Origin: Dendrobates tinctorius
Taxonomy: Eukaryota
Length of the DNA: 64,000 bases
Direction of reading: 5' to 3'
Assembly: GCF_039654945.1 (NCBI RefSeq)
Contig: NW_027361869.1
Span: 2,976,001-3,040,000 of the forward strand
Positions within the stretch are counted from its first letter, which is position 1. Each line of letters opens with the position of its first letter. The position numbers were made by a program, and so were the translations under genes. Under the pieces are notes generated by a model that saw nothing but the letters and a program-made list of their open reading frames with translations, made no database searches and was not told the DNA's origin. Shown here one piece after another: positions 15,267 to 56,635 of this stretch.

Positions 15267-15389
15267 TTACCTGCCCCCTCTCCTCTGAGCCTCACTACGC
15301 TCAAATGCCGCAATGAGGAGCAGAGCGTGGATGGTCTCCGCTGGGTCCGAGCCTCTGGACCCTGACCCTTCCAATCCACCAAATAAAAC
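15267..15389 (-). pseudogene. Gypsy integrase C-terminal chromodomain remnant plus polypurine tract
   Basis: Minus strand reads FYLVDWKGQGPE (chromodomain YLVxWKGY-like), then PPT GAGGAGAGGGGGCAGG just before the LTR. Cut off by the hAT end at 15390. Confidence 0.75.
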
Positions 15390-15727
15390 TAGAGTTGAGC
15401 AAAACGGGTTGAAAAAATTCAAAAGTCACCGACTTTCGCCAAAATCAGGTTTCATGAAACAAAACCTGAACTTAGCATGAGGTTGGCGACCATCACGTTT
15501 CAAAAGATGCTTTAGCGCCCTTTTTCAGCCAATCAGGAAGAACGGACACTGTGGGCAACGTGATGACATAGGCAGCGGTTACCATCATGTTTGTGAAGAG
15601 CATGCAAGTGATTGGCTTGCTTTGTGTGGCGTCACAGGGGGTATAAAAGGGCGTGCACGCCGACCGCCATGTTACTTATGCTGATCTCAGAATAGGGAGA
15701 GCTGCTGTTGCTGCTGATTCTGTAGGG

Positions 15728-15889
15728 CAGAGTTTCCCAACTCCAGTCCTCAAGGCCCACCAACAGATCATGTTTTCAGGATTTCCTTTGTATTGCACAG
15801 GTGATGCAATTATCACCTGAGCAATACTAAGGAAATCCTGAAAACATGATCTGTTGGTGGGCCTTGAGGACTGGAGTTGGGGAACCCTG
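15728..15889. mobile_element. 162-bp palindromic hAT (Charlie-like) MITE nested in hAT copy A
   Basis: TIR CAGAGTTTCCCAACTCC ... GGAGTTGGGGAACCCTG, perfect 8-bp TSD CTGTAGGG. The equivalent site in copy B (about 30806-30813) is empty. Confidence 0.9.
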
Positions 15890-16650
15890 CTGTAGGGAGA
15901 GCGTTAGGCAGGGAAGAAGATACAAAAAACTGCTTCTGCTGCTAGCGATTTTGCCTGTACAACACACCAGTCACTGTGTGTGCAGTGCAAGGGGAGGCTA
16001 TATTTCGGTGCATCAGCTCTGTTGGTTATTAGGCTGCCTTATAAGGCTCCCTGATAGCTGCATTGCTGTTTTCACACTGCTGAGCAAACTGCTTTTTTCA
16101 AAGCAATACAAATTTTATTGTTTTGTCCTGGTGAGTTACTGAGCGTTCATTTTTTCACACACCGTACAGTGGTGTATGCTCCTCACACAGTACCGTGTAC
16201 GGCTGTTATCACGGCCAAATTGAAGCTATCTACGTGTGTGACTCTGTAAGGAAAAGTCAAGGAGTTTGTCCGTTCTTACAGACCTACACTCTAGGAAGAT
16301 TCCAATTCTGCCCAATTCTATATACACCTTGTAGTTAGTCATACACTAGGCAATTTCTGCCTGTCACATTGCGGTGTAATCTGTCCTGGGCCTGAGACAA
16401 TAGTTCAGCGTCCTCCAATCTACAGTGAGATTAAAATTCTCACCACTACTTTATACAGCTTTTGCCTTCTCATACACCAGCCAATTTCTGCCTGTCACAT
16501 AGCGGTGCAATCTATACTGGGCCTGAGACAATAGTTCAGCGTCCTCCAATCTACAGTGAGATTCAAATTCTCACCAATACTCTATAGACCCTTTACCTTG
16601 TTTTACAGTACCATATAGCTGTTGTTATTTTGGGTACCTTTTTCAAAAAA

Positions 16651-21895: not shown

Positions 21896-22741
21896 TAGAG
21901 TTGAGCGACTTTTGGTTTTTTAGGCTCGCGTTTCGTTTCGTGAAACCCGACTTTTCCAAAAGTCGGGTCGAGCAAGATCGTCCGATTATAGGGAAAAGTC
22001 GGGGTCGTCCCGAAACACGAAACCCAATGTAAGTCAATGGGGAATAAAAGTCGGCAGTGAGAGGAGGACAGGAAACACACCTACAGTGCCCATTTGAATG
22101 CCAAAAGCATCAATTCTTCTTTCTTAAGCTTGTCAACCTTAATTAACTTCATAATACAAGTTACGCACTGAAAAATGGGGGTTATTTGGCTACAAACTGT
22201 GGGGGGGAGGGCTGGCTCCAGGTTTTCATGTGCCCTGGGCGAAAGAGCGCCCCTTTAACACATACCACAACTCATCATGCTCCGATACGGCAGAGAAATA
22301 GCGGTATAGTCCAATGAAAAATACCTCACTTTTTACATCTCATGACGAGGCCCATCTATTTCTCCATACAGAATCATTGGTCCCATATAATGTTTGAAAC
22401 AGTATATGATGAGCTCCACATAATGCTACAGTATATGATGGTCCCCATGGATGAAGCTCCACTGTCTTATGGGCCCAAATAATGCTCCAAACATAATGGG
22501 CCCCATTTCTAATGCTCTAGTGTATAATGGGCCCTGTAAATGCTGCTCCAGTGTCTGATGTCCACCTTTGGAATGTTCCAGTGTATGGTGGGCCCCATCT
22601 ATCATTCTCCAGAGTATAGTGCTCCCCAAAAATTGCTGTCCCAACATTGAAAACAATCAAATAAGTCTCCTCGCTAGGGAATCCCTGTACTTGTCTGGAC
22701 AGGTGCTGTAGCTTGCTTAACAGCTCGCCAGCCGTTCTCAC

Positions 22742-23770
22742 GCCCAGTATGGATTACACGTGATTGCACAAAGGTGAGAAAGGGTACCGTATCCCCAGAT
22801 AACATGTATGGATAGCGTACACATTCAAAATATATGTCTCAGGAGGCAGGCTCAGACGGTGTTAGGCCCAGTATGGATTGCACGTGATTGCACAAAGGTT
22901 AGAAAGGGTACCGTATCACCGGATAACATGTATGGATAGCGTACACATTCAAAATATATGTCTATACAGCATGAGGCAGGCTCAGACGGTGTTAGGCCCA
23001 GTATGGATTGCACGTGATTGCACAAAGGTTAGAAAGGGTACCGTATCCCCAGATAACATGTATGGATAGCGTACACATTCAAAATATATGTCTCAGGAGG
23101 CAGGCTCAGACGGTGTTAGGCCCAGTATGGATTGCACGTGATTGCACAAAGGTTAGAAAGGGTACCGTATCCCCGGATAACATGTATGGATAGCGTACAC
23201 ATTCAAAATATATGTCTATACAGCATGAGGCAGGCTCAGATGGTGTTAGGCCCAGTATGGATTGCACGTGATTGCACAAAGGTTAGAAAGGGTACCGTAT
23301 CCCCAGATAACATGTATGGATAGCGTACACATTCAAAATATATGTCTCAGGAGGCAGGCTCAGACGGTGTTAGGCCCAGTATGGATTGCACGTGATTGCA
23401 CAAAGGTTAGAAAGGGTACCGTATCCCCGGATAACATGTATGGATAGCGTACACATTCATAATATATGTCTATACAGCATGAGGCAGGCTCAGACGGTGT
23501 TAGGCCCAGTATGGATTGCACGTGATTGCACAAAGGTTAGAAAGGGTACCGTATCACCGGATAACATGTATGGATAGCGTACACATTCAAAATATATGTC
23601 TATACAGCATGAGGCAGGCTCAGACGGTGTTAGGCCCAGTATGGATTGCACGTGATTGAACAAAGGTTAGAAAGGGTACCGTATCACCGGATAACATGTA
23701 TGGATAGCGTACACATTCAAAATATATGTCTATACATCAGGAGGCAGGCTCAGACGGTGTCAGGCACAGT
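22742..23770. repeat. 124/130-bp tandem repeat inside hAT copy B (about 8 units)
   Basis: Unit GGATTGCACGTGATTGCACAAAGGTTAGAAAGGGTACCG..., with 6-bp length variants. The same array is at 58460-60605. Confidence 0.9.
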
Positions 23771-24195
23771 ATGGATTTGACGGCCCGGATTACACAGCGG
23801 AGGAGCAGGGAGAGGTAAAGATTGCAAATGCTGGGGCCCTGCCCAAGCAAGGGGGGCCCACTCGTGGGCGTCGGTACTGGCACTGGGCCCCTCATAGTAC
23901 AGCGGTGTGTCTGACGGCGGGTGTGCACCACCACCGTCAGAGACACTTGATTGCACTATGAGGGACCCTGTGCCAGTGCCCGCGCCCAAGAGTCGGCCTA
24001 CCCACCCGTCCAGGGCAATGGCACTCGCACGGTGTCGTGCGCTAGGTGGTGACCCCGGCCATGGGGGGGAGGCAGCACAGTTAGGGAGTTTTAGAAAGTG
24101 GCATATGTTGATGTTGGACATTCAGCTGATGCAAAAGGCGAAATAGGTGAAGTACCAGGAAGAGGTGGACCAAAGCAAGCCATTTTTCTGTCACC

Positions 24196-27100
24196 CTATG
24201 TGTCATCAGGGGAAGGTGGGACAAAATCCTTGGAAACCCATGCGTGGTTCATTTTAATGAAGGTTAGATCATCCACATTTTGGGTTGACAGACGGGTCCT
24301 TTTTTCTGTCAGGATTGATCCAGCTGCACTGAAGACTCTTTCCAATAGCACACTTGCAGCTGGGCAAGCGAGCTCCTGTAAGGCATATTGGGCCAATTCA
24401 GGCCAGGTGTCCAGTTTAGCGGCCCAATAGTCAAAGGGGAATGACCTGTGTGGGAGAACATCGATATGGGAGGAAAAGTAGTTTGTAACCATAGTTGACA
24501 ACTGCTGTCTCCTGTCACTTTCCATCGATGCAGTATTACCAGTTGTGTGAGCGGTATTTGAAAAATCAGTCCACAACATTGTCATGAAACCCCTGTCTCC
24601 AACGCCACTTCTGCTGTGTGCACCACGAACACCTCTGCCAAGCTGCCCCCGGCCCGTACGGCTCGTGTGAGAACCATCACCGCTGCTGTGTGCTGGGAAT
24701 GCCTCAAGCAACCGATTTACCAGAGTTGCTTGTTTATTAGCCAATATTAGGTCAAGGTTCTCCTGTGGCATGATGTTTTGTAATTTGCCTTTATAGCGTG
24801 GATCCAGGATGCTGGCCAACCAGTAGTCGTCATCGTTCATCATTTTGGCAATGCGGGGGTCCCTTTTTAGGATCCGCAAGGCATAATCTGACATGTGGGC
24901 CAATGTTCCCGGTGTCAATGATGCACTGCGAGTGCTGGGTGGAGGAGCACTTTCTGGCAAATCCACATCCCTCCAGTCACGCACAAACCCTGTACCAGAC
25001 CTTGCCACGCCAACATTTTCACTTGCCCCACGAGATGCATCCTCCTCCCCTAAGTAATCATCCCCATCATCATCCTCCTCCTCCTCTTCTTCCTCCACCT
25101 CGTCCAGGAGAGGTCCCTGAGCAGACAATGGCTGAATGTCATCAAGGATTCCCTCCTCCTCTTCCTCCTCATCAACATTGGCTGCAGAGGCCTGCTCCTT
25201 AAGGTGCGTCAAAGTTTGCATGAGCAGACGCATAAGTGGGATGCTCATGCTTAGGATGGCGTCGTCTGCGCTTACCAGCCGTGTGCATTCCTCAAAACAC
25301 TGAAGGACTTTACAAAGGTCTTTCAGCTTCGACCACTGCACACCTGTCAACTCCATGTCTGCTCTCAAAGTGCCTGGCCATGTATCCTCCCACAAATGCA
25401 TTATGGCCTGCCTCTGCTCGCACAGCCGCTCCACCATGTGCAGGGTGGAGTTCCACCTTGTTGCAATGTCGATAATGAGGTGGTGGTTGGGAAGGTGGAG
25501 CAATCGCTGCAGCTTCTGCATACGAACGGAGTGTACAGGTGACCGGCGGATGTGTGCGCACAGTCTTCGCACCTTATGGAGCAGGGCTGTTAACTCCGGA
25601 TAATTTTTGAGGAAGCACTGCACCACCAGGTTCAAGGTGTGAGCCAAGCAAGGTATGTGGCTGAGTTTTGAAAGGGCTATGGCTGCCACAAAATTACGGC
25701 CGTTATCACTAACTACCTTGCCTGCCTCAAGATGTACACTGCCCAGCCATGACTCAGTTTGTCGCTTCAAGTACTCGGCCAGCACCTCGGCGGTGTGTCT
25801 GTCGCCCAAACACATCATCTGCAACACAGCCTGCTGACACTTTCCACTAGCTGCTCGATAGGGGGACACATCGTGTGCAACAGTGGCAGCTGCAGATGGA
25901 GTGCTCGTACGACTGCGCTCTGTGGACGAGCTTTCGCTTCTGGAGGAGGAGGAGGAGGGTCGAACGCCTACAGCCAACTGTTTCCTATACCGTGGGCTAG
26001 GCAGCACTGTCCCACTACCGCTGTCCCCTGTGGACCCTGCATCCACCACATTAACCCAGTGCGCAGTGATGGACACGTAACGGCCCTGGCCATGCCGACT
26101 GGACCATGCATCAGTTGTGAGGTGCACCTTTCCGCTCACTGACTGCTTGAGTGCATGGACAATGCGGTCTTTCACATGATGGTGGAGGGCTGGGATGGCT
26201 TTGCGAGAGAAGAAGTGGCGACTGGGTAGGTCATAGCGTGGTACTGCATAGGCCATGAGTTCGCGGAAAGCTGTGCTTTCCACCAACCGAAAGGGCATCA
26301 TCTCAAACGAGATTAGTTTGGCAATGTGGGCGTTCAAACCCAGTGTACGCGGATGAGAGACTGAGTACTTTCTTGACCTACTCATAGTGTCTGGGAGGGT
26401 GAGCTGGACTTGAGAGCTGCATATGGTGGAAGTAGCGGTGGACAGGGCGGACTGAGAGAGGGTTGATGATGGTGATGGAGTTGGTGTTCTTTCTGATGGC
26501 CTAGAATCAGTCTTTCGTTGATATAACAGTGGGATTCCCTGACTGCTGTGGTCTTGCAACGACACCTCAACATTTGCTGCTGTGCTAACCGGTGGGCTTA
26601 CAGTGGGGGAAACAATGTAGCGTTGCTGACTACCTTCGTTGTGATCAGTTGCACATGTGGCACTTGAGGTTTGGTGTTGTGTCCACGCTTGCAAGTGCAT
26701 GCTGGTTAAATGTCTAAGCATGCAACTGGTATTCAAATTTTTCAGATTTTTCCCTCGGCTAAACGTCTTTGCGCACTTCTTACAGATAACCTTGGCCTGA
26801 TCATGAGGATTTTGTTCAAAAAAGTGCCACACTGCACTCTTCCTACTTTGGCAGACATTTTGCGGCCTAGCACGCTGTGATCTTTTGACCCTCTGGACAA
26901 GCTGTCCAGCAACTCTTTTGATGTTTGGAACCTGTCTTTGGAGTGCTCCGGGCCTGCCAGATAACAGCTGTTGCGATGTCGATGTCTGCTGTGGATGCTC
27001 CTCATCTGAGCTATTGGAAGCAGCACCCTCTTCCCCCAATGGATGCCAATCTGGGTCAACAACTGGGTCATCCATCACCTCCTCTTCTATGTCATGTGCA

Positions 27101-27732
27101 CCTTCCTCTGTGTCACCGTGTATGGTGGTATAGTGTGCGGGAAGGGGCACCTGAGTCTCATCAGGGTCAGAATCTGGCTCTGTACACTGCGAGGACAATG
27201 TAGTGCTCTGAGTGAATGTACCAGCAGAATCATCCATCAGCGGCTGTGCATCAGTGCACTCCATGTCAGATTCATCTTGGCCTGGGTAATTCACCATTTG
27301 ACTTGATAATCCAGGCATGGTATGTGAAAACAGCTCCATGGAGTAATCAGTAGTATGGCCTGCGTCATCCTTCAATCTTGGTTGGGGTGAAGGACACAAG
27401 GAAAGGTGTGGTTCATGAACATGAGCCTCCAATGACGACTCAGTGCTTTTACTTTTTACAACTGAAGAAGAGGAGGCGATAGAGCTGGAGGCTGAGTCAG
27501 CAATGTAAGACAAAACTTTTTCCTGATGCTCTGGCTTTAAAAGCGGTTTGCCAACTCCTAGAAAACTAAGCGTTCGAGGCCTTATGTAGCCAGACAATGA
27601 CGCAGGGTCAGCACCTCCTGCATTCGGTCCTATTTTGCTCTTGCCACTACCATCAGATCCACCACCAACACCATCATTACCAGCTGCCAACCCCCGCCCA
27701 ATTCCACGGCCTCTTCCACGAGCCTTCCTCAT
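24196..27732 (-). CDS. hAT transposase, ZBED-like, intact, 1178 aa from ATG 27732 (MRKARGRGRG...)
   Basis: Uninterrupted ORF with basic N-terminus, BED zinc finger, D (LTTDAWS), D (VSDNGRN), CxxH (CLAH), TRWNST, acidic insert and the C-terminal hAT dimerisation region (WPELAQYALQELACPAASVLLERVFS) with the catalytic E. Confidence 0.93.
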   Translation of the reverse strand: MRKARGRGRGIGRGLAAGNDGVGGGSDGSGKSKIGPNAGGADPASLSGYIRPRTLSFLGVGKPLLKPEHQEKVLSYIADSASSSIASSSSVVKSKSTESSLEAHVHEPHLSLCPSPQPRLKDDAGHTTDYSMELFSHTMPGLSSQMVNYPGQDESDMECTDAQPLMDDSAGTFTQSTTLSSQCTEPDSDPDETQVPLPAHYTTIHGDTEEGAHDIEEEVMDDPVVDPDWHPLGEEGAASNSSDEEHPQQTSTSQQLLSGRPGALQRQVPNIKRVAGQLVQRVKRSQRARPQNVCQSRKSAVWHFFEQNPHDQAKVICKKCAKTFSRGKNLKNLNTSCMLRHLTSMHLQAWTQHQTSSATCATDHNEGSQQRYIVSPTVSPPVSTAANVEVSLQDHSSQGIPLLYQRKTDSRPSERTPTPSPSSTLSQSALSTATSTICSSQVQLTLPDTMSRSRKYSVSHPRTLGLNAHIAKLISFEMMPFRLVESTAFRELMAYAVPRYDLPSRHFFSRKAIPALHHHVKDRIVHALKQSVSGKVHLTTDAWSSRHGQGRYVSITAHWVNVVDAGSTGDSGSGTVLPSPRYRKQLAVGVRPSSSSSRSESSSTERSRTSTPSAAATVAHDVSPYRAASGKCQQAVLQMMCLGDRHTAEVLAEYLKRQTESWLGSVHLEAGKVVSDNGRNFVAAIALSKLSHIPCLAHTLNLVVQCFLKNYPELTALLHKVRRLCAHIRRSPVHSVRMQKLQRLLHLPNHHLIIDIATRWNSTLHMVERLCEQRQAIMHLWEDTWPGTLRADMELTGVQWSKLKDLCKVLQCFEECTRLVSADDAILSMSIPLMRLLMQTLTHLKEQASAANVDEEEEEEGILDDIQPLSAQGPLLDEVEEEEEEEDDDGDDYLGEEDASRGASENVGVARSGTGFVRDWRDVDLPESAPPPSTRSASLTPGTLAHMSDYALRILKRDPRIAKMMNDDDYWLASILDPRYKGKLQNIMPQENLDLILANKQATLVNRLLEAFPAHSSGDGSHTSRTGRGQLGRGVRGAHSRSGVGDRGFMTMLWTDFSNTAHTTGNTASMESDRRQQLSTMVTNYFSSHIDVLPHRSFPFDYWAAKLDTWPELAQYALQELACPAASVLLERVFSAAGSILTEKRTRLSTQNVDDLTFIKMNHAWVSKDFVPPSPDDT

Positions 27733-27799
27733 TTTTGGTAGAAATGTAGACAAAATCCAACAAACTATATAGTAATGTAAAACAAGGTACAAGGTGTCT

Positions 27800-30270
27800 A
27801 TAGGACAGGGGAGATTTTGAATATCTGCACACACTTTTGGACACTGGACACTTTTGGATTGTGTGAGGCCCAATGAATATCTCAGCGCTATGTGACAGGC
27901 TCGATGGCACTGCTGTGACAAAAGTGACTAGAGGATAAGGGAGATTTTGAATATCTGCACACACTTTTGGACACTGGACACTTTTGGATTGTGTGAGGCC
28001 CACTGATATCTCAGCGCTATGTGACAGGCTCGATGGCACAGCTGTGACAAAAGTGACTAGAGGATAAGGGAGATTTTGAATATCTGCACACACTTTTGGA
28101 CAGTGGACACTTTTGGATTGTGTGAGGCCCACTGTTATCTCAGCGCTATGTGACAGGCTCGATGGCACTGCTGTGACCTAAGTGACTAGAGGATAAGGGA
28201 GATTTTGAATATCTGCACACACTTTTGGACACTGGACACTTTTGGATTGTGTGAGGCCCACTGATATCTCAGCGCTATGTGACAGGCTCGATGGCACTGC
28301 TGTGACAAAAGTGACTAGAGGATAAGGGAGATTTTGAATATCTGCACACACTTTTGGACACTGGACACTTTTGGATTGTGTGAGGCCCACTGATATCTCA
28401 GCGCTATGTGACAGGCTCGATGGCACTGCTGTGACAAAAGTGACTAGAGGATAAGGGAGATTTTGAATATCTGCACACACTTTTGGACAGTGGACACTTT
28501 TGGATTGTGTGAGGCCCACTGTTATCTCAGCGCTATGTGACAGGCTCGATGGCACTGCTGTGACCTAAGTGACTAGAGGATAAGGGAGATTTTGAATATC
28601 TGCACACACTTTTGGACACTGGACACTTTTGGATTGTGTGAGGCCCACTGATATCTCAGCTCTATGTGACAGGCTCGATGGCACTGCTGTGACAAAAGTG
28701 ACTAGAGGATAAGGGAGATTTTGAATATCTGCACACACTTTTGGACACTGGACACTTTTGGATTGTGTGAGGCCCACTGATATCTCAGCGCTATGTGACA
28801 GGCTCGATGGCACTGCTGTGACAAAAGTGACTAGAGGATAAGGGAGATTTTGAATATCTGCACACACTTTTGGACACTGGACACTTTTGGATTGTGTGAG
28901 GCCCACTGATATCTGAGCGCTATGTGACAGGCTCGATGGCACTGCTGTGACAAAAGTGACTAGAGGATAAGGGAGATTTTGAATATCTGCACACACTTTT
29001 GGACACTGGACACTTTTGGATTGTGTGAGGCCCACTGATATCTCAGCGCTATGTGACAGGCTCGATGGCACTGCTGTGACAAAAGTGACTAGAGGATAAG
29101 GGAGATTTTGAATATCTGCACACACTTTTGGACACTGGACACTTTTGGATTGTGTGAGGCCCACTGATATCTGAGCGCTATGTGACAGGCTCGATGGCAC
29201 TGCTGTGACAAAAGTGACTTGAGGATAAGGGAGATTTTGAATATCTGCACACACTTTTGGACAGTGGACACTTTTGGATTGTGTGAGGCCCACTGTTATC
29301 TCAGCGCTATGTGACAGGCTCGATGGCACTGCTGTGACCTAAGTGACTAGAGGATAAGGGAGATTTTGAATATCTGCACACACTTTTGGACACTGGACAC
29401 TTTTGGATTGTGTGAGGCCCACTGATATCTCAGCGCTATGTGACAGGCTCGATGGCACTGCTGTGACAAAAGTGACTAGAGGATAAGGGAGATTTTGAAT
29501 ATCTGCACACACTTTTGGACACTGGACACTTTTGGATTGTGTGAGGCCCACTGATATCTCAGCGCTATGTGACAGGCTCGATGGCACTGCTGTGACAAAA
29601 GTGACTAGAGGATAAGGGAGATTTTGAATATCTGCACACACTTTTGGACACTGGACACTTTTGGATTGTGTGAGGCCCACTGATATCTCAGCGCTATGTG
29701 ACAGGCTCGATGGCACAGCTGTGACAAAAGTGACTAGAGGATAAGGGAGATTTTGAATATCTGCACATACTTTAGGACACTGGACACTTTTGGATTGTGT
29801 GAGGCCCACTGATATCTGAGCGCTATGTGACAGGCTCGATGGCACTGCTGTGACAAAAGTGACTAGAGGATAATTGAGATTTTGAATATCTGCACACACT
29901 TTTGGACACTGGACACTTTTGGATTGTGTGAGGCCCACTGATATCTCAGCGCTATGTGACAGGCTCGATGGCACTGCTGTGACAAAAGTGACTAGAGGAT
30001 AAGGGAGATTTTGAATATCTGCACACACTTTTGGACACTGGACACTTTTGGATTGTGTGAGGCCCACTGATATCTCAGCGCTATGTGACAGGCTCGATGG
30101 CACTGCTGTGACAAAAGTGACTAGAGGATAAGGGAGATTTTGAATATCTGCACACACTTTTGGACACAGGACACTTTTGGATTGTGTGAGGCCCAATGAA
30201 TATCTGAGCGCTATGTGACAGGCTCGATGGCACAGCTGTGACCAAAGTGACTAGAGGATAAGGGAGATTG
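27800..30270. repeat. 129-bp tandem repeat (about 19 near-identical units) between promoter and transposase ATG in copy B
   Basis: Unit GTGACTAGAGGATAAGGGAGATTTTGAATATCTGCACACACTTTTGGACACTGGACAC...; source of the 43-aa repeat ORFs. Confidence 0.95.
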
Positions 30271-30849
30271 GATTGCTTTTAATAAAGCAGTTTGCGGAGC
30301 AGTGGGTAAACAACAATGCCAGCCTGTCAGGAAGCCTTAAAAGGCAGCCCAACAACCAACACCACTGATACACCACTTTATAGCCTCCCCTTGCACTGCA
30401 CACACAGTGACTGGTGTGTTGTGCAGGCCAAATTGCTATCAGCAGCAGAAGCAGTTTTTTTTTTCTTCTCAGCAGGACAAAAAAAAAAAATTGGGATTGC
30501 TTAAGCAGTTTGAGGCCCAATGAATATCTGAGCGCTATGTGACAGGCTCGATGGCGCAGCTGTGACCAAAGTGACTAGAGGATAAGGGAGATTGGATTGC
30601 TTTTAAAAAAGCAGTTTGCGGAGCAGTGGGTAAACAGCAATGCCAGCCTGTCAGGAAGCCTTAGAAGGCAGCCCAACAACCAACACCACTGATACACCAC
30701 TATATAGCCTCCCCTTGCACTGCACACACAGTGACTGGTGTGTTGTGCAGGCCAAATCGCTAGCAGCAGAAGCAGTTTTTTTGTCTTCTTCCCTGCCTAA
30801 CGCTCTCCCTACAGAATCAGCAGCAACCTCTCCCTATGCTAAGATCGGC

Positions 30850-31005
30850 AGAAGTAAGATGGCGGTCGGCGTGCACGCCCTTTTATACCCCCTGTGACGC
30901 CCACCAAAGCAAGCCAATCACTTGCATGCCCTTCTGAAAGATGGTGGTGACCCGTGCCTATGTCATCACGTTGCCCACAGTGTCCGTGGATCCTGATTGG
31001 CTGAA
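30850..31005 (-). promoter_or_regulatory. Putative transposase promoter of hAT copy B
   Basis: Minus-strand GGGGTATAAAAGGGCG near 30876-30891, CCAAT/ATTGG boxes near 30914 and 30996, YY1-like AAGATGGCGG at 30856-30865. Conserved in copy A (about 15525-15670). Confidence 0.55.
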
Positions 31006-31162
31006 AAAGAGCGCAAAACAAACTTTTGAAACGCGACTTTGGCGCGTAAGTCGCCGACCTCGTGGCCGACCTCATCCTAGGGTCGGGTTTCGTTTCATGA
31101 AACCCGACTTTGCCAAAAGTCGGCGACTTTTGAATTTTTTCGACCCGTTTCGCTCAACTCTA

Positions 31163-34100
31163 GTCACCACCTCATCCCTGCAGAGCTGTATGATAAGTGC
31201 CACCACCTCATCCCTGCAGAGCTGTATGATTAGTGCCACTACCTCATCCCTGCAGAGCTGTATTTTCAGTGCCACCAACTCATCCCTGCAGAGCTGTATG
31301 ATCACTGCCACCACCTCATCATTGCAGAGCTGTATGATCAGTGCCACTACCACATCCCTGCAGAGCTGTATGATTAGTGCCACCACCTAATCCCTGCAGA
31401 ACTGTATGATCACTGCCACCACCTTATCCCTGCAGAGCTATATGATCAGTGCCACCACTTCCTCACTGCAGAGCTGTATGATTTGTGTCACCACATCATC
31501 CCTGCAGAGCTTTATGATAAGTGCCACCACCTCATCCCTGCAGAGCAGTATGATTAGTTTAACCACCTCATCCCTGCAGAGCTGTATGATAAGTGCCACC
31601 ACCTCATCCCTGCAGAGCTGTTTGATTAGTGCCACCACCTCATCCCAGCAGAGCTGTATGATCGGTGCCACCATCTCATCCCTGCAGAGTTGTATGATCG
31701 GTGCCACTACCTCATAACTGCAGAGCTGTATGATCGCTGTCACCACCTCATCCCTGCAGAGCTGTATGATAAGTGCCACCAACTCATCATTGCAGAGCTG
31801 TATGATCAGTGCCACTACCACATCCCTGCAGAGCTGTATGATTAGTGCCACCTCATCCCTGCAGAGCTGTATGATATGTGCCACCACCTCATCATTGCAG
31901 AGCTGTATGATCAGTGCCACTACCACATCCCTGCAGAGCTGTATGATTAGTGCCACCACCTCCTCCCCGCAAAGCTGTATGATCAGTGCCACCACCTTGT
32001 CCACGCAGAGCTGCATGATTAGTGCCACCACCTCATCCCGGCAGAGCTGTATGATAAGTGCCACCACCTCATCCCTGCAGAGCTGTATGATTAGTGTCAC
32101 CACCTCATCCCTGCAGAGCTGTATGATAAGTGCCACCACCTCATCCCTGCAGAGTTGTATGATCGGTGCCACTACCTCATAACTGCAGAACTGTATGATC
32201 AGTGCCACCACCTCCTCCCTGCAGTGCCGTATGATCATTTCCACCACCTCATCCCTGCAGAGCTGTATGATAAGTGCCACCAACTCATCCCTGCAGAGCT
32301 GTATGATTAGTGTGACTACCTCATCCCTGCAGAGCTGTATTATCAGTGCCATCACCTCATCGTTGCAAAGCTGTATTATAAGTGCCACCACCTCATCCCT
32401 GCAAAGCTGTATAATCAGTGCCACCACCTTGTTCACACAGAGCTGTATGATTAGTGCGACTACCTCATCCCTGCAGAACTGTATTATCAGTGCCTCCACC
32501 TCATCGTTGCAGTGCTGTATGATCAGTGCCACCACCTCATCCCTGCAGAGCTGTATGATAAGTGCCACCAACTCATCCCTGCAGAGCTGTATGATTAGTG
32601 TGACTACCTCATCCCTGCAGAGCTGTATTATCAGTGCCATCAGCTCATCCCTGCAAAGCTGTATAATCAGTGCCACCACCTTGTTCACACAGAGCTGTAT
32701 GATTAGTGCGACTACCTCATCCCTGCAGAACTGTATTATCAGTGCCTCCACCTCATCGTTGCAGAGCTGTATGATCAGTGCCACTACCTCATCCCTGCAG
32801 AGCTGTATGATTAGTGCCACCACCTCCTCCCCGCAAAGCTGTATGATCAGTGCCACCACCTTGTCCACGCAGAGCTGCATGATTAGTGCCACCACCTCAT
32901 CCCGGCAGAGCTGTATGATTAGTGTCACCACCTCATCCCTGCAGAGCTGTATGATAAGTGCCACCACCTCATCCCTGCAGAGTTGTATGATCGGTGCCAC
33001 TACCTCATAACTGCAGAGCTGTATGATCACTGTCACCACCTCATCCCTGTAGAGCTGTATGATCAGTGCCACCACCTCCTCCCTGCAGTGCCGTATGATC
33101 ATTTCCACCACCTCATCCCTGCAGAGCTGTATGATAAGTGCCACCAACTCATCCCTGCAGAGCTGTATGATTAGTGTGACTACCTCATCCCTCCAGAGCT
33201 GTATTATCAGTGCCATCACCTCATCGTTGCAAAGCTGTATTATAAGTGCCACCACCTCATTCCTGCAAAGCTGTATAATCAGTGCCACCACCTTGTTCAC
33301 ACAGAGCTGTATGATTAGTGCGACTACCTCATCCCTGCAGAACTGTATTATCAGTGACTCCACCTCACCGTTGCAGTGCTGTATGATCAGTGCCTCCACC
33401 TCATCATTGCAGAGCTGTAGGATCAGTGCCACTACCTCATCCCTGCAGAGCTGTATGATTAGTGCCACCACCTCATCCCTGCAGAGCTGTATGATTAGAG
33501 CCACTACCCCATCCCTGCAGAGCTGTATGATCAGTACCACGACCTCGTCCCCGCAAAGCTGTATGATCAGTGTCACCACCTTGTCCACACAGAGCTGTAT
33601 GATCCGTACCACCAACTCGTCCCCGCAAAGCTGTGTGATCAGTGCCACCACCTTGTCCACGCAGAGCTGCATGATTAGTGCCACCACCTCATCCCTGCAG
33701 AGCTGTATGATAAGTGCCACCACCTCATCCCTGCAGAGCTGTATGATCACTGCCACCACCTCATCGCTGCAGAGCTGTATGATCATTGCCACTACCTCAT
33801 CCCCGAGAGCTGTATTATCAGTGCCACCACCTCATCCCTGCAGAGCAGTATGATTAGTGTCACCAGCTCATCCCTGCAGAGCTGCGTGATAAGTGCCACC
33901 ACCTCATCCCTGCAGAGCTGTATGATCGGTGCCAACTCATCCCTGCAGAGTTGTATGATCGGTGCCACTACCTCATAACTGCAGAGCTGTATGATCGGTG
34001 CCACTACCTCATAACTGCAGAGCTGTATGATCGCTGTCACCACCTCATCCCTGTAGAGCTGTATGATCAGTGCCACCCCCTCCTTCCTGCAGAGCCGTAT

Positions 34101-37100
34101 GATCATTTCCACCACCTCATCACTGCACAGCTGTATGATAAGTGTCACCACCTCATCCCTGCAGAGCTGTATTATCAGTGCCACTACCTCATCCCTCCAG
34201 AGGTGTATGATCAGTAACACCACCTTGTCCCCAAAGAGCTGTATGATCAATGTCACCACCTCCTCACTGCAGAGCCGTATGATCATTTCCACCACCTCAT
34301 CCCTGTAGAGCTGTATGATTAGTGCCACTACCTCATCCCTGCAGAGCTGTATTATCAGTGCCACCACCTCTTCCCTGCAGAGCTGTATGATCGGTGCCAC
34401 ATCTCATTCCTGCAGAGCTGTATGATCAGTACCACCACCAAGTCCCCGCAAAGCTGTCTGATCAGTGCCACCAACTTGTCCACGCAGAGCTGCATGATTA
34501 GTGCCACCACCTCATCCCTGCAGAGCTGTATGATCATTTCAAACAACTCATCCCTGCAGAGCTGTATAAGTGCCACCATCTCATCCCTGCAAAGCTGTAT
34601 GATCACTGTCACCACCTCATCCCTGCAGAGCTATATGATCAGTGCCATTTCCTTTTCCCTGCAGAGCTGTATGTTCAGTGCCACCACCTCCTCACTGAAG
34701 AGCTGTATGATTAGTGTCACCACCTCGTCCCTGCAAAGCTGTATGATCAGTGCTACCACCTTGTCCACACAGAGCTGTATAATCGGTGCCACTACTTCAT
34801 CGTTGCAAAGCTGTATGATCAGTGCCACCACCTCCTCCCTGCAGAGCTGTATGATCAGTACAACCAACTCTTCCCTGCAAAGCGGTAAGCCACCACCTTG
34901 TCCACACAGAGCTGTATTAGTGCCACCACCTCATCCCTGCAGAGCTGTATGATCAGTACCACCACCATGTCCCCGCAAAGCTGTATGATCAGTGCCACCA
35001 CCTCCTCCCTAGAGCCGTATGATCATTTCCACCAACTCTTCCTTGCAGAGCTGTATGATCACTGCCACCATCTCATCGCTGCAGAGCTGTATGATCAGTG
35101 CCACATCTTATCCCTGCAGAGCTGTATGATTGCTGTCACCACCTCATCCCTGCAGAGCTGTATGATCAGTGCCATCACCTCATTCCTGCAGAGCTGTATG
35201 ATCAGTACCACCACCTCGTCCCCGCAAAGCTGTATGATCAGTGCAGAGCTGTATGATTATTGTCACCACATCATCCCTGCAGAGCTATATAAGTGCCATC
35301 ACCTCATCCCTGCAGAACTGTATGATCAGTGCCACCACTTCCTCCCTGCAGAGCCGTATGATCATTTCAAACAACTCATCCCTGCAGAGCTGTATGATAA
35401 GTGCCACCATCTCATCCCTGCAGAGCTGTATGATCACTGTCACCACCTCATCCCTGCAGAGCTATATGATCAGTGCCATTTCCTCTTCCCTGCAGAGCTG
35501 TATGATCAGTGCCACCACCTCCTCACTGAAGAGCTGTATGATTAGTGTCACCACCTTGTCCCTGCAAAGCTGTATGATCAGTGTTACCACCTTGTCCACG
35601 CAGAGCTGTATGATCGGTGCCACTACTTCATCGTTGCAAAGCTGTATGATCAGTGCCACCACCTCCTCCCTGCAAAGCGGTAAAATCAGTGCCACCACCT
35701 TGTCCACACAGAGCTGTATGATTAGTGCCACCACCTCATCCCTGCAGAGCTGTATGATGAGTGCCACCACCTCATTCCTGCAAAGCTGTATGATCAGTGC
35801 CACCACCTCCTCCCTACAGAGCCGTATGATCATTTCCACCAACTCATCCCTGCAGAGCTGTATGATCAGTGCCATCACCTCATTCCTGCAGAGCTGTATG
35901 ATCAGTACCACCACCTCGTCCCCGCAAAGCTGTATGATCAGTGCAGAGCTGTATGATTATTGTCACCACATCATCCCTGCAGAGCTATATGATAAGTGCC
36001 ATCACCTCATCCCTGCAGAGCTGTATGATCACTGCCATCACCTCATCCTTGCAAACCTGTGTGATCAGTACCACAACCTCGTCCCCGCAAAGCTGAATGA
36101 TCAGTGCCACCACCTTGTCCACGCAGAGCTGTAAGATCGGTGCGATCTCCTCATCGTTGCAGAGCTGTATAATCAGTACCACCACCTTGTCCCCGCAAAG
36201 TTGTATGATCAGTGCCACCACCTCCTCCCTGCAGAGCCGTATGATCATTTCCACCACCTCATCACTGCAGAGCTGTATGATAAGTGCAACCACCTAATCC
36301 CTGCAGAGCTGTATGATAAGTGCCATCACCTCATCCCTGCAGAGCTGTATTATCAGTGCCACCACCTCATCCCTGCAGAGCTGAATGATTAGTGTCACCA
36401 CCCCATTGCTGCAGAGTTGTATGATCGGTGCCATTACCTCATAACTGCAGAGCTGTATGATCGCTGTCACCACCTCATCCCGGTAGAGCTGTATGATCAG
36501 TGTCACCACCTTGTCCACGCAGAGCTGTATGATCAGTACCACCACCTCCTCCCCGCAAAGCTGTATGATCACTGTAACCACCTTGTCCACGCAGAGCTGT
36601 ATGATTAGTGCCATCACCTCATCCCTGCAGAGCTGTATAATCAGTGCAAGCACCTCATCCCTGCAGAGCTGTATTAGTGCCACTCCCTCATCCCTGCAGA
36701 GCTGTATGATCAGTACCACCACCTTGTCCCCGCAAAGCTGTATGATCAGTGCCACCACCTCCTCCCTGCAGAGCGGTATGATCATTTCCACCTACTCATC
36801 CCTGCAGAGCTGTAAGATAAGTGCAACCACCACATCCTTGCAGAGCTGTATGATCACTGCCACCACCTCAACCCTGCAGAGCTTTATGATTAGTGCCACT
36901 ACCTCATCCCGGTAGAGCTGTATAATCAGTACCACCACCTCGTCCCCGCAAAGCTGTATTATCAGTGCCACCACCTTGTTCACGCAGAGCTCTATGATCG
37001 GTGCCACCACCTCATCCCTGCAGAGCTGTATGATCACTGCCACCACCTCATCGTTGCAGAGCTGTAATAATAATAATACATTTTATTTTTATAGCGCCGC

Positions 37101-37335
37101 CATATTCCGCAGCACTTTACATTTCAGAGGGGATTTGTACAGACAATAGACATTACAGCATAACAATAATCTCATACAGTAGATTATAACAAATACCAAG
37201 AGGAAAGAAAGCCCTGCTCACAAGCTTACAGTCTATGAGGAAATGTATTATCAGTGCCACTACCTCATCCCTGCAGAGCTGTATTATCAGTGCCACTACC
37301 TCATCCCTGCAGAGCTGTATTATCAGTGCCACCAC
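31163..37335 (+). repeat. 36-bp minisatellite derived from the histone 3'-processing signal, right segment (about 165 units)
   Basis: Continues in phase after the hAT TSD. More diverged toward the right end; interrupted at 37065-37242. Confidence 0.95.
37065..37242 (-). mobile_element. Retroposon fragment with an L2-type 3' tail
   Basis: Minus strand ends GTAAAGTGCTGCGGAATATGGCGGCGCTATAAAAATAAAATG followed by a (TAT)n tail, typical of L2 LINE and L2-dependent SINE tails. Confidence 0.65.
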
Positions 37336-38158
37336 CCCTAGATCAGATGCTGTTACACAGTGTCAATATTTACTGCCATTAAAAAGAATAAATAGTTTAC
37401 CAACTTGGATTACAATCTCCTCCACAGATCAGTATACATGGCTCTATGCACACATATATGTATGAGCTTCAATGCTCTGTTGAAGCTTCTGATGGAAACG
37501 GTGGAAAAACTTTCAGAAATGATACTCATTATTACTGAATTACACTTCAAGTTATTCTATGCAGTGCTCGGCACGGATACATATAATGGTTACTTCTCTA
37601 CACATCAGACGTTACAGAATTATTTTTAGAAGCTAAGGAAACTACAAAGTGCAGGAAATTCAAAATTCCGATCCGTCCTTGTGTTCAGCCAATCAGCAGA
37701 AGGGGGAGGAGCTAATGTTAACCGTTAACGAATGTGAAGTTCGCGCTCAGTGGCTGATGACTTTCCCGTCCTTTGTCTTCCTGAAGTTTGAGGACAGATA
37801 GCTGGAAACGTGTGTTGAGCCATCAAAGGTCGCTTCTGTTCCATGCAGGAGTCTGCCGATCTCTATATCCGCTTTCTATAATACCAGGAGCATAAGTTTA
37901 CCTGCCTCTATCCACTGTGACTCCGTCATACCATCCATATTCCTAGGACGGAGAATATAAAGAAACGAGGTCCTGCAGTTTACAGAGAACCTTAATAGAA
38001 GTAGGTGGAGGAGTCTCTAAAATGCTGATTAATATTATCTAGGCAGCCAACTATAGAACAGTAATTACACTCCTGCAGGGAAATGAATAACGTGACCCTG
38101 ATACATGATATAATGTGGCTGATGTCAGGAATTCGCTCGTCTTGAGGGAGGATTTGGG

Positions 38159-38174
38159 GGCTCTGAAAAGAGCC
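38159..38174 (-). terminator. Histone 3' stem-loop (H3)
   Basis: GGCTCTTTTCAGAGCC on the minus strand. Confidence 0.93.
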
Positions 38175-53335: not shown

Positions 53336-53809
53336 CCCTCCTCTATTATCAGTGACACTTATGAGGCTGCTCACACTTATGCCAACTCATCCCTGCAGAG
53401 CTGTGAATACTCCGCACATACGGGGTACAGGGAGGTCACAGGTCAGGGAGGCGGCAGTCAGCGGAGCCATCGCCTGTGTTACCCTTCTGGGCTCTCAGCA
53501 GCTCCAGGTCGTCCCCACATCGTACAATCAGCGTCCTGTACGATAGACATTGTAGTAAAGATCCCTGTGATGGTGACAGGAGCCGGGAACAGGAGGAACG
53601 AGTTCCCCCAGCAGATGTATCTTCCCGGATACACAGCGATGTGCAGATCTGGAGGACGACGGCGATGATCCCGGGACCTCCTCTCCGCTCTTCCCCGGCG
53701 TCTCTGCTAGTGACAGCTACAGACGGTCGGTGGAGAAGATGGCGAAGAAGAAGCGGCGGAGGAAGCGCGCTCTGCTGTCCGGTGTCAGCCGGTAAAGGGC
53801 TTTTATTAC

Positions 53810-54023: not shown

Positions 54024-54638
54024 ATGGCAGAGACCGCGCCAGCCGCCGCTCCCCCTCCCGCAGAACCGGCTGCCAAGTCCAAGAAGCAGCCAAAGAAATC
54101 CGCCGCCAAGAGCAGCAAGAAATCCTCCGGTCCTGGCGTCTCCGAGCTGATCGTGAAAGCCGTGTCAGCCTCTAAGGAGCGCAGTGGGGTGTCTCTGGCC
54201 GCCCTGAAGAAGGCGCTGTCTGCCGGAGGGTACGATGTAGAGAAGAACAACAGCCGCCTGAAGCTGGCCGTCAGGTCTCTGGTCACCAAGGGCACCCTCC
54301 TCCAGGTGAAGGGCAGCGGCGCCTCCGGGTCCTTCAAACTCAACAAGAAGCAGGAGACTAAAGTGGCCAAGAAGTCAGCAGCCAAGCCCAAGAAACCCGC
54401 TGCTGCCAAGAAAGCCACCAAATCTCCGAAGAAGCCCAAGAAGGTTCCGACCGCGGCCAAGAAGAGCCCGAAAAAGGCCAAGAAGCCCGCAGCTGCCAAG
54501 AAAGCGGCCAAGAGCCCGAAAAAGCCGAAAGCCGCTCCCAAGCCTAAGAAGGTGACGAAGAGTCCGGCTAAAAAGGCGGCCAAACCTAAAGCTGCCAAGA
54601 AGGCGGCTAAAGCCAAGAAGCCCGCGGCCAAGAAATAA
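54024..54638 (+). CDS. H1: Histone H1 (somatic, replication-dependent), 204 aa
   Basis: [15 protein letters not shown]..., globular domain [77 protein letters not shown]-rich tail with SPKK motifs. Confidence 0.97.
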
Positions 54639-54667
54639 GAGGAGCCGCTCTGTCCACATGCTACAAA

Positions 54668-54708
54668 GGCTCTTTTCAGAGCCACCACCTCATCCCTGCA
54701 GAGCTGTA
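54668..54708 (+). terminator. H1 3' processing signal: stem-loop 54668-54683, ACCAC, HDE AGAGCTGTA 54700-54708
   Basis: AAA GGCTCT TTTC AGAGCC ACCAC CTCATCCCTGC AGAGCTGTA. Confidence 0.93.
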
Positions 54709-55104
54709 TGATCAGTGTCACCACCTCCTCCCTGCTGAGTTATATGATCAGTGCCATCACCTCTTCCCTGCAGAGCTGTATGATTAGTACCACCACATCT
54801 TCCCTACAGAGCTGTATGATCGGTGCCACATCTCATTCCTGCAGAGCAGTATGATCAGTACCACCTCGTCCCCGCAAAGCTGTATGATCATTTCCACCAC
54901 CTCATCCCTGCAGAGCTGTATGATCAGTGCCACTACCTCCTCCCTGCAGAGCCGTATGATCATTTCCACTACCTCCTCCCTGCAGAGCCATATGATCATT
55001 TCCACCACCTCATCCCTGCAGAGCTGTATGATCAGTGCCACTAGCTCTTTCCTGCAGAGGTGTATTATCAGTGCCACCACCTCATCTCTGCAGAGCTGTA
55101 TAAG
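54678..55104 (+). repeat. 36-bp minisatellite (about 12 units) starting inside the H1 stem-loop
   Basis: First unit AGAGCCACCACCTCATCCCTGCAGAGCTGTATGATC, followed in phase by AGTGTCACCAC... Interrupted by an LTR at 55105. Confidence 0.95.
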
Positions 55105-56635
55105 TGTTAGGCATCAGATTCCTGACACTGCACAGCGGGAATCCAGAGCCAGACATCCAGCAGTCTCCCATTATCCTCCGACCGCTTCGGGTGTTGCTCA
55201 GCAATAACAGCAAGCCGAGCCAGGCGTGCTGCTTAGACTTGCTCTGACAGCCTGGATGTTGCTGCCACCTCTGGTGCAGCAATGGTAGCGCAACCTGTTC
55301 TGCAGGGAACCGCTCCAGAGGCTAAGTCCTTGTGCCGTACTACTGGGCATGTCTGCAAGGTGACCTCTCACTGGAGAGCAGGGGTCACATGCTCAGGTCC
55401 TGCGTCGGATCTGATTGGTCCTTTCCAGGGTTTTGGAAGGTCCCGGAAGCGCATGGTTATAAAAAGCCCACATGGCGGCTCGGCCATGCGCTAGTGTAGC
55501 ATATTATGCTGTGTGTGAATGGTGATGGATGCATGGACTGGTGACTGTCACCATTCGTATTATCAGAGGGAAGGGGTTTCATAATAAGTCAGAGTGTTGG
55601 TTAGTCAGCTCCAGATTGTGGCAATCTACACTCCACTGTGCCTCCTGCACTGCCCACTAGCGTCCGAAGGTGCTCGGTCTTCTGGCGCCATCGTCCAGCG
55701 GCTTTAGTTATTGACGGGCTGTGGTAGCAGCGTCCCTTGGCGGTTGCGGCTGCAACCCCACCCGCTGAGCTTCCTGTGAAGCTAACAGGGCCAGCGTCTT
55801 TATATTTATTACTGCCAGGTGACTCTGTGTCTGAACAGAGCCGCTCTTAGGCCTCTTTCACACTTCAGTTTTTTACAATCAGTCACAATCCGCCAGGTTT
55901 TGAAAAAAACGGATCCTCAATTTTCTTTTGAGGATCCGTTTTTTTTCCCCATTGACTTGCATTAATGGCGGATTGTGACGGATTGCTGTCCGTTGCATCC
56001 GTTTTTTTGAGGATCCGCCAAAAGTTGCTGTCCGTCACCATCCTCAAAGATTTCAAAACGGAGCTTGCAACGTTTTTTCTCTGGTGGATCCTCCAGACAC
56101 TCATTTAACCAACAAGAAAAATCTCTCTCTCTCTCCCTCTCCCTCTCCCTCTCTCCTTCCCGGCCAGCAGTTCCTTTATTTCCTCATTTTCAGGATCCGT
56201 CTGAAAACGGATCCTGTGCCATCCGTTCACATCAGTTGAGAACGGATCCGCTTCTCTGACTTTTTCGCGGATATGAACTGATGCAAAAAACTGAAGTGTG
56301 AAAGAGGCCTTAGCGTTCGGGTGACGTTAACCCGAGCACAGTACTTCACCTTCTGGTGCATCTGCCATTGTCCAGCAGCGGTGTTTCCATCTACCGCATG
56401 GTGGACCCCGGGAGGCGAACGCACCTTCTATTATTTATATCTGGTGCGTTCCGCCGACCCTAACATTACACTAGCGCCAGGGTCTGGCTGGCAATGGCAG
56501 ACAGACGTGCAGCAGTTGCAGCGCTAAATTCGGCAGCTGGAGAGCAGGTTGGTGGCTATTGAGAGCGCCAACTCAGCTGCGAATACCGCGCTAACTGCTG
56601 CTCAGACAGTTGCTGAGACTCTCACGTGTGCCCAC
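55105..56635 (+). mobile_element. Gypsy retrotransposon 5' LTR (55105-56465) plus start of internal region
   Basis: TGTTAGG ... CCTAACA termini, TATA GTTATAAAAAG near 55456, homology to 14320-15266. Followed by a short internal leader and a decayed gag-like start; interrupted by hAT copy C. Confidence 0.8.
55850..56309. mobile_element. PIF/Harbinger MITE nested in the LTR
   Basis: TIR GGCCTCTTTCACACTTCAGTTTTT ... AAAAACTGAAGTGTGAAAGAGGCC, TTA TSD, internal ACGGATCC motifs. Confidence 0.88.

What the first reader, a model, noticed from the sequence alone, without database searches (positions are those of the whole stretch)
54668..55104. A minisatellite born from the histone mRNA 3'-processing cassette: tandem U7-binding sites behind H1
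Seen: the 36-bp array starts inside the H1 stem-loop. Unit 1 is AGAGCC (3' arm of the stem), ACCAC (cleavage site), CTCATCCCTGC, AGAGCTGTA, TGATC. Later units are the same with AGAGCC changed to AGTGCC, so the hairpin cannot form but the cleavage-site motif, spacer and downstream element remain. The H2B 3' flank has the same layout in single copy (GCCACCACCCCGTCTCCATCAGAGCTAT). Established: replication-dependent histone pre-mRNAs are cut about 5 nt after the stem-loop, guided by U7 snRNA pairing to the HDE. The vertebrate U7 5' end contains UACAGCUCU, the exact complement of AGAGCUGUA (9 contiguous pairs). Inference: H1 read-through RNA would present a polymer of SLBP-less U7 sites. It could act as a fail-safe cleavage/termination track, a U7 snRNP sponge, or a scaffold for histone locus bodies.
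Basis: partly seen in the sequence, partly recalled or inferred. Interest (0 to 1): 0.92.

Follow-up and report, generated by a model that had tools for sequence, protein, structure and literature searches.

The report
Satellite copied from histone H1 3′ signal
Behind a frog-type histone H1 gene lies a 36-bp tandem repeat whose unit copies the signal that normally cuts histone mRNA; the origin is well supported and appears unreported, but nothing yet shows that the extra copies do anything.

Summary
A 12-unit, 36-bp array (54678-55104) begins inside the 3' arm of the H1 stem-loop. Its unit is stem 3' arm + ACCAC + pyrimidine spacer + AGAGCTGTA + 5 nt. All six histone genes in the window share this layout. 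A random 36-mer would show it with probability about 7e-8. AGAGCUGUA is the exact complement of UACAGCUCU in published human and mouse U7.

The array is not special to this H1. The same unit forms one 8.4-kb array (19415-37336, about 236 units). That array is split by a hAT transposon with an 8-bp target duplication, has no H1 in front, and is antisense to the neighbouring H3. The two arrays share derived variants, so they are one satellite family.

The functional claims are unsupported:
- The core is only nominally better conserved (p about 0.04), and rare variants show no depletion.
- The duplex is 9 bp (-14 kcal/mol), whereas SLBP-independent cleavage needs 15-16 bp.
- The antisense strand pairs equally well by energy.
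- RNA contigs hold satellite pieces, but none bridges H1 into the array.

Verdict: a gene-signal-derived satellite, most likely a neutral expansion in which only unit 1 works. Unchecked first-stage notes report similar arrays at other histone clusters of this genome.

The parts
54024..54638 (+). Histone H1 gene (204 aa), apparently intact
   Evidence: ORF; Pfam Linker_histone E 5.6e-22; chordate H1 clusters in the atlas
54668..54683 (+). H1 mRNA 3' stem-loop, 29 nt after the stop codon
   Evidence: Exact match to the 16-nt consensus; Rfam RF00032 34.3 bits at 54663-54709; the only stable hairpin in the RNA fold
54678..54713 (+). Unit 1: stem 3' arm + ACCAC + pyrimidine spacer + AGAGCTGTA (HDE core) + TGATC. 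It is the H1 gene's own processing cassette and also the first repeat unit.
   Evidence: 35/36 identical to the satellite consensus; U7 duplex -14.0 kcal/mol, 9 contiguous pairs
54678..55104 (+). 36-bp minisatellite, 12 units, behind H1; units 2-12 lack the stem 5' arm and loop
   Evidence: TRF; unit table; DNA-like run X18 holds exact contigs for 54755-54912 and 54935-55020
19415..21895 (+). Left part of the large array of the same 36-bp unit (about 70 units); its left edge abuts a truncated hAT transposase ORF
   Evidence: TRF; junction read; units
21896..31162 (-). 9,267-bp hAT transposon inserted into the array. It has 13-bp terminal inverted repeats and an intact 1,241-aa transposase at 24196-27921.
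   Evidence: TIRs and phase restoration; zf-BED and hAT dimerisation domains
21888..21895 (.). Left copy of the 8-bp target-site duplication GTCACCAC (right copy at 31163-31170)
31163..37066 (+). Right part of the large array (about 166 units)
37067..37243 (.). 177-bp unrelated insertion in the array
   Evidence: Read; the array resumes in phase-like form at 37244
37244..37336 (+). Last 2.6 units of the large array, about 820 bp from the H3 stem-loop on the opposite strand
15389..19414 (+). Truncated hAT copy whose transposase ORF is cut at the array edge
   Evidence: TIR at 15389; homology to the right end of the intact copy; ORF ends at 19415 where the intact copy continues
38159..38174 (-). 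H3 stem-loop; any H3 read-through would enter the large array in antisense
55105..55493 (+). Repeated element directly downstream of the H1 array, with a TATA-like box near 55455; its 55247-55500 part is present in RNA contigs
   Evidence: 70% inverted relative at 14884-15266; RNA contigs over 55247-55500 in runs X1, X22, X2

Best explanation
This is a satellite DNA family whose 36-bp monomer copies the replication-dependent histone 3' processing cassette, without the stem's 5' arm and loop. It most likely arose by tandem duplication (slippage or unequal exchange) of an H1 3' flank. It then expanded and was homogenised by unequal crossing-over inside the multi-copy histone cluster. At this H1 gene, unit 1 together with the stem-loop is the working processing signal: SLBP binds the hairpin, U7 pairs with AGAGCUGUA, and cleavage follows ACCA(C). 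Units 2-12, and the 8.4-kb array elsewhere, are by-products of repeat expansion. In read-through RNA each would offer only a 9-bp U7 match with no SLBP site, making it at best a weak, inefficient U7 site. Shown here: the anatomy, the cassette layout, the family relationship between the arrays, and the hAT insertion. Inferred: the duplication mechanism, that unit 1 is functional, and that the other units are neutral.
For: - The array starts in the stem's 3' arm, and unit 1 is 35/36 identical to the consensus.
- All six histone 3' flanks in the window share the layout: stem-loop, ACCCA/ACCAC, an 11-12 nt pyrimidine spacer, then AGAG at +17/18.
- Chance of both features in a composition-matched 36-mer at that spacing is about 7e-8.
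- The U7 5' end contains UACAGCUCU (PMC7026596).
- The same unit forms an 8.4-kb array that predates a hAT insertion with an intact TSD and restored phase.
- The arrays share linked variants and a 2-unit block.
- Rare variants are not depleted in the core (2.0 vs 2.56 per site, p 0.31).
- The array RNA folds no better than shuffles (z 0.24).
- SLBP-independent cleavage needs 15-16 bp, and even a 21-bp duplex alone recruits U7 snRNP poorly. Here the duplex is 9 bp at -14.0 kcal/mol, against -24.1 for a 16-bp reference.
Against: - The AGAGCTGTA core lies in the best-conserved block of the unit: mean identity 0.947 vs about 0.89, rank 2 of 36 windows, nominal p 0.037. Some constraint could produce this.
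- Satellite pieces occur in RNA libraries of two organisms, so the arrays may be transcribed.
- Unchecked notes say such arrays recur behind H1 at other clusters of this genome. Recurrence could mean retention by selection, or simply co-amplification with the cluster.
- This species' own U7 sequence was not obtained.
Confidence: 0.62

Rival explanations
1. Fail-safe processing and termination track. Polymerases that miss the H1 stem-loop site transcribe a run of HDE-plus-cleavage-context units. U7 snRNP binds one of them and, through its molecular-ruler geometry, cuts about 11 nt upstream. This triggers 5'-3' degradation and termination before the downstream promoter-like element.
For: Each intact unit keeps ACCAC and the core at native spacing: 5 of 12 units here and 78 of 230 in the large array. 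Mammalian U7 snRNP can cleave without SLBP when pairing is strong, and it follows a ruler mechanism. The core sits in the best-conserved block. A TATA-like, transcribed element lies just downstream.
Against: Pairing is only 9 bp, far from the 15-16 bp that supports SLBP-independent cleavage, and a 21-bp duplex alone holds U7 snRNP poorly. Most units in the window sit where no histone gene reads into them in sense. No RNA contig bridges H1 into the array. Rare variants are not depleted in the core.
Confidence: 0.2
2. Multivalent U7 snRNP platform. Array transcripts (nascent, on lampbrush loops or in S phase) concentrate or titrate U7 snRNP. They would act like an architectural repeat RNA that helps build the histone locus body, or as a sponge.
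For: There are hundreds of units per cluster with -14 kcal/mol U7 complementarity. The units have very high summed word depth in run X18. Amphibian oocyte histone loci carry U7-containing bodies (PMC12046345). Repeat-rich architectural RNAs are an established concept (PMC7151548, listed).
Against: There is no direct evidence of transcription strand or level. [quoted passage not shown] The antisense strand pairs as well by energy, so the energy argument is unspecific. The -14 kcal/mol value lies only near the 1st-2nd percentile of random window 36-mers.
Confidence: 0.08
3. An unrelated, pre-existing satellite was joined to the H1 3' end by microhomology at GCCACCAC, and its resemblance to a processing cassette is coincidental.
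For: The large array has no H1 in front, and its left edge is an abrupt junction with a truncated transposon. The junction at H1 lies within a shared GCCACCAC.
Against: The unit carries both a 10/11 match to the stem arm plus ACCAC and, at the native spacing, a 9-nt U7 complement; the joint chance is about 7e-8. Its spacer is pyrimidine-rich like those of the five paralogous flanks.
Confidence: 0.04
4. The repeat encodes a 12-residue repeat protein (36 = 12 codons; long ORFs occur on both strands), or it is an assembly artefact.
For: There are ORFs of up to 784 aa through the array. Pfam gave whole-protein hits for the repeat ORF.
Against: Every frame has 61-191 stops in about 2,790 codons. 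The Pfam hits have no single stretch that passes, typical of low-complexity repeats. Independent short contigs reproduce array segments exactly. The clean TSD and phase restoration argue for real DNA.
Confidence: 0.02

Closest known systems
Canonical replication-dependent histone pre-mRNA 3' processing signal (stem-loop + ACCCA + histone downstream element paired by U7 snRNA)
   Same: Unit 1 with the H1 hairpin has every sequence feature: the 16-nt stem-loop, ACCAC, an 11-nt spacer, and a purine core complementary to U7.
   Different: Units 2-12 and all units of the 8.4-kb array lack the stem's 5' arm and loop, so they cannot bind SLBP. The signal is present hundreds of times in tandem, not once per gene.
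PcP190 satellite of hyloid frogs, derived from the transcribed region of 5S rDNA (PMC11675491, PMC4201667)
   Same: It is a frog satellite whose monomer descends from a functional segment of a multi-copy gene family. Transcription is reported for PcP190 and possible here.
   Different: The source here is a 36-bp cis-acting mRNA-processing signal, not an RNA gene body. The arrays stay inside the histone cluster and one remains fused to its source gene.
Newt histone clusters separated by satellite DNA, with read-through transcription of satellites on lampbrush chromosomes (Gall laboratory; read-through mentioned in PMC2114352 and PMC12046345; the satellite 1 details are from my own knowledge)
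   Same: These are amphibian histone genes embedded in tandem repeats, and read-through from upstream gene promoters into satellite DNA is documented.
   Different: To my knowledge the newt satellites are not derived from the histone processing signal. Read-through is not demonstrated here.
Architectural or sponge repeat RNAs that bind a factor through tandem short motifs (review PMC7151548, listed)
   Same: It would work like these if array RNA bound U7 snRNP multivalently.
   Different: No binding, localisation or even strand of transcription is known here.

Membership tests
Histone 3' processing signal | Conserved 16-nt stem-loop (6-bp stem, 4-nt loop) 25-60 nt after the stop codon | tested here: met
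   Met for unit 1 only: exact consensus at 54668-54683, 29 nt after the stop; Rfam 34.3 bits against gathering 34. Units 2-12 have no 5' arm or loop.
Histone 3' processing signal | ACCCA-type cleavage context directly after the stem | tested here: met
   ACCAC after the stem, as in H2B of the same window. ACCAC is intact in 7/12 local units and 139/230 large-array units.
Histone 3' processing signal | Purine-rich downstream element about 10-15 nt past the cleavage site, complementary to the U7 5' end | tested here: met
   AGAGCTGTA lies 11 nt after ACCAC, giving 9 contiguous pairs with the human/mouse U7 printed in PMC7026596. The species' own U7 was not available.
Histone 3' processing signal | U7- and SLBP-dependent cleavage in vivo or in vitro | not testable with these tools
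   The RNA contigs have no strand or end information and none spans 54602-54655.
Satellite / minisatellite DNA | Head-to-tail tandem units forming arrays at more than one place, with shared subvariants | tested here: met
   TRF arrays at 19415-21895, 31165-37066, 37244-37336 and 54676-55101; 160 near-consensus units, all on the + strand; shared linked variants.
Gene-derived satellite (PcP190-like) | Monomer homologous to a functional gene segment beyond chance | tested here: met
   Layout shared with six histone flanks; joint chance about 7e-8; one array is still fused to H1.
Architectural / sponge repeat RNA | Array is transcribed and its RNA binds the factor | tested here: inconclusive
   Short satellite contigs occur in RNA libraries of organisms A (depth 2-4) and B (summed depth up to about 590), but DNA carry-over cannot be excluded and binding is untestable.
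hAT transposon (the element splitting the large array) | Terminal inverted repeats, 8-bp target-site duplication, BED finger and hAT dimerisation domain | tested here: met
   13-bp TIRs, TSD GTCACCAC, 36-bp phase restored on removal; Pfam PF02892 and PF05699.

The most novel reading that the evidence does not exclude
Array transcripts made by read-through from H1 (sense) present hundreds of stem-less U7 sites. These act together as a fail-safe cleavage/termination track, or as a multivalent platform that concentrates U7 snRNP at amphibian histone loci. The satellite would then be a functional part of histone locus body biology and not junk.
Probability: 0.12. Interest if true: 0.9.

Novelty: new variant of a known kind. 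Interest (0 to 1): 0.55.

Why it matters
Satellites derived from gene segments are known, for example from 5S rDNA. My literature searches found no satellite whose monomer is an mRNA 3'-processing signal with a defined trans-acting partner.

It gives a clean, datable example of how a satellite is born from a functional cis-element inside a tandem gene cluster. It also offers a natural multimer of stem-less U7 sites. Such a multimer could be used to test how much HDE pairing alone can do in vivo, in amphibian oocytes whose histone loci carry U7-rich bodies and where satellite read-through is classical. If the units prove inert, the finding remains a tidy case of repeat evolution.

Tried and rejected
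- **Frog U7 sequence.** I looked for this species' or any frog U7 sequence. The U7 survey (PMC5054213) gives only accession numbers in its text, PMC46907 is not held, and a search for 'Xenopus U7' found nothing. I used the published human/mouse 5' end instead.
- **Metagenome scans.** Two scans, one for the unit junction and one for stem-loop + N11 + core, found nothing.
- **Duplex energy as a test of U7 specificity.** Rejected as uninformative. Antisense units average -12.5 kcal/mol and the consensus antisense reaches -14.9, against -14.0 for sense. Random window 36-mers reach -14.4 at the 1st percentile.
- **Coding repeat.** Rejected because of the stop counts in every frame.
- **Structured RNA in the array.** Rejected (z 0.24).
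- **Other H1 remnants near the large array.** None found by blastn or tblastn.
- **Relationship of the arrays' right flanks.** The right flanks of the two arrays are not related to each other, so a simple 'array of the preceding cluster repeat' model is not directly supported here.
- **Failed simulation.** A brute-force simulation of chance timed out and was replaced by an analytic estimate.
- **Species identity.** Not obtained; the atlas says only chordate H1.

Full report
**Observation**

The window carries a histone cluster:
- H3 (minus strand, stem-loop 38159-38174)
- H4 (41943-42254, minus)
- H2B (44193-44573, minus, partly masked)
- H2A (from 44878, plus)
- a second H4 (47238-47558, minus)
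- H1 (54024-54638, plus)

H1 is a linker histone by Pfam.

Twenty-nine bases after the H1 stop lies a perfect 16-nt histone stem-loop at 54668-54683 (Rfam Histone3). Tandem Repeats Finder reports a 36-bp array of 11.9 copies at 54676-55101.

A wrap-around alignment puts 12 units from 54678. Unit 1 begins with the 3' arm of the stem (AGAGCC) and continues ACCAC, an 11-nt pyrimidine spacer, AGAGCTGTA and TGATC. The following units start with AGTGCC or close variants.

**What the unit is**

The 3' flanks of all six histone genes in the window share one design. It consists of the stem-loop, ACCCA/ACCAC (H3 has CCCAA, the second H4 ATCCA), an 11-12-nt pyrimidine-rich spacer, and a purine-rich AGAG block starting at +17 or +18. 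The repeat unit reproduces that design in full.

For a composition-matched random 36-mer:
- a 10/11 match to stem arm plus ACCAC in any phase has probability about 6.5e-4
- a 9-nt complement to the first 20 nt of U7 at the right spacing has probability about 1e-4
- the joint probability is about 7e-8

The human and mouse U7 sequences printed in PMC7026596 both contain UACAGCUCU, the exact complement of AGAGCUGUA. I conclude that the monomer descends from a histone 3' processing cassette. Unit 1, together with the hairpin, is the H1 gene's own signal.

**The wider picture in the window**

The same unit, always on the plus strand, occurs only at 19415-37338 and 54696-55083. The stretches 19415-21895 and 31163-37066 were once continuous. 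Between them lies a 9,267-bp element with:
- 13-bp terminal inverted repeats
- the 8-bp duplication GTCACCAC
- a 1,241-aa transposase carrying BED and hAT dimerisation domains

Removing this element restores the 36-bp phase exactly. A 177-bp insert separates the last 2.6 units.

This 8.4-kb array holds about 236 units, some 95% of all units in the window. Three points about its setting:
- It has no H1 in front. Its left edge is an abrupt junction with a truncated hAT transposase ORF.
- No H1 remnant exists elsewhere in the window.
- It lies about 820 bp downstream of H3 but in the opposite orientation, so H3 read-through would make antisense RNA.

The H1 array shares with the large array a linked derived variant (AGAGCC[A/G]TATGATC followed by ATTTCC). 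It also shares a block of two consecutive units, including the same 1-nt deletion. The two arrays therefore belong to one family that diversified before they separated. The 12 units behind this H1 are not where the satellite was born.

**Tests of function**

Conservation:
- In 230 large-array units, the AGAGCTGTA core has mean identity 0.947, against 0.886-0.906 for the other segments.
- The best-conserved block is GCAGAGCTGTATGAT.
- The core window ranks 2nd of 36 cyclic windows, with a nominal one-sided p of 0.037.
- Rare variants, the best proxy for recent independent mutations, are not depleted in the core (2.0 vs 2.56 per site, p 0.31).

Pairing with U7:
- The consensus unit pairs with U7 nt 1-20 at -14.0 kcal/mol through 9 contiguous pairs. 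This is stronger than the other five HDEs of the window (-8.3 to -12.9).
- It is far from a 16-bp reference duplex at -14.0 vs -24.1 kcal/mol.
- Published work shows SLBP-independent cleavage for duplexes of 15-16 bp. It also states that even a 21-bp duplex alone recruits U7 snRNP poorly (PMC7026596 and PMC5435866).
- As a control, the G-rich antisense strand reaches -14.9 kcal/mol, and random 36-mers of the window reach -14.4 at the first percentile. Energy alone says little.

Other checks:
- The multimer RNA has no structure beyond the H1 hairpin (z 0.24).
- All reading frames are full of stops.

**RNA and DNA reads**

- *Organism A, RNA libraries (X1, X22).* Both show only trace satellite contigs (depth 2-4), similar to their trace H1 signal.
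- *Organism B, RNA library (X2).* One run holds an H1-like contig (54059-54600, about 95% identical). It also holds satellite contigs of 85-114 nt with 6-7 differences, and summed depth up to about 590. The satellite is therefore shared with a relative and present in RNA libraries.
- *No bridge from H1.* No RNA contig covers 54602-54655, there is no strand information, and DNA carry-over cannot be excluded.
- *Organism A, DNA-like run (X18).* It reproduces array segments exactly and shows very high summed depth for both H1 and the units, consistent with a high-copy cluster. The tool warns that such depths are not copy numbers.

**Comparison with the known**

My literature searches found no satellite built from a histone downstream element. 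The closest analogues are:
- the 5S rDNA-derived PcP190 satellite of frogs
- amphibian histone clusters embedded in satellites, with lampbrush read-through (plus my own knowledge of the newt satellite 1 work)
- as a 'works like' analogue for the speculative reading only, repeat-rich architectural RNAs

Unchecked first-stage notes report similar 36-bp and 30-bp arrays at other histone clusters of this genome, some behind H1 and some next to H3. These are leads, not evidence.

**Verdict**

The feature is real, and an origin from the histone 3' cassette is well supported. It is best filed as a new variant of gene-derived satellite DNA. The most likely mechanism is ordinary repeat expansion, with only unit 1 functional. 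A role as back-up U7 sites is possible but unsupported, and a role as a U7 platform is speculative.

Noticed in passing
window 44878-45354 (+): The H2A ORF is 158 aa. After ...GVTIAQG its frame departs from the canonical H2A tail (judged from my own knowledge of H2A), and the ORF runs through its own stem-loop at 45304-45319. It may be a frameshifted or variant H2A.
   Followed up: no
window 44142-44157 (-), 45304-45319 (+), 38159-38174 (-): The H2A and H2B stem-loops carry loop TCTA instead of TTTC. The H3 stem-loop is followed by CCCAA, has the weakest U7 pairing (-8.3 kcal/mol), and falls below Rfam's gathering score.
   Followed up: partly
   Followed up: partly
window 56636-64000: A third hAT copy starts at 56636 (same TIR, flank GTGCCCAC, 97.5% identical to the left end of the copy in the array). 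It contains an 18S rRNA-like fragment at 57948-58378 (Rfam 94.7 bits).
   Followed up: partly
window 55105-55493 (+) and 14884-15266 (-): A repeated element directly after the H1 array has a 70% identical inverted relative next to the truncated hAT. It has a TATA-like box near 55455, and RNA contigs of two organisms cover 55247-55500.
   Followed up: partly
window 37651-37719, 43548-43617, 47671-47753: A CCAAT-containing block like the H4 promoter region recurs three times, once between the large array and H3 with no gene behind it.
   Followed up: no
window 1-4600; 39447-40989; 48065-48487 and 51194-53346: Three further unrelated satellites (48-bp, 35-bp and 21-bp units) lie in or beside the histone cluster. 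Arrays of 124-130-bp units sit inside the hAT copies (22742-23777, 27794-30269, 58459-60609).
   Followed up: no
window 19415-37336, antisense strand: The G-rich antisense strand of the unit can pair with almost the whole U7 5' end, through G-U wobbles, at -14.9 kcal/mol. This matters because H3 read-through would produce that strand.
   Followed up: partly
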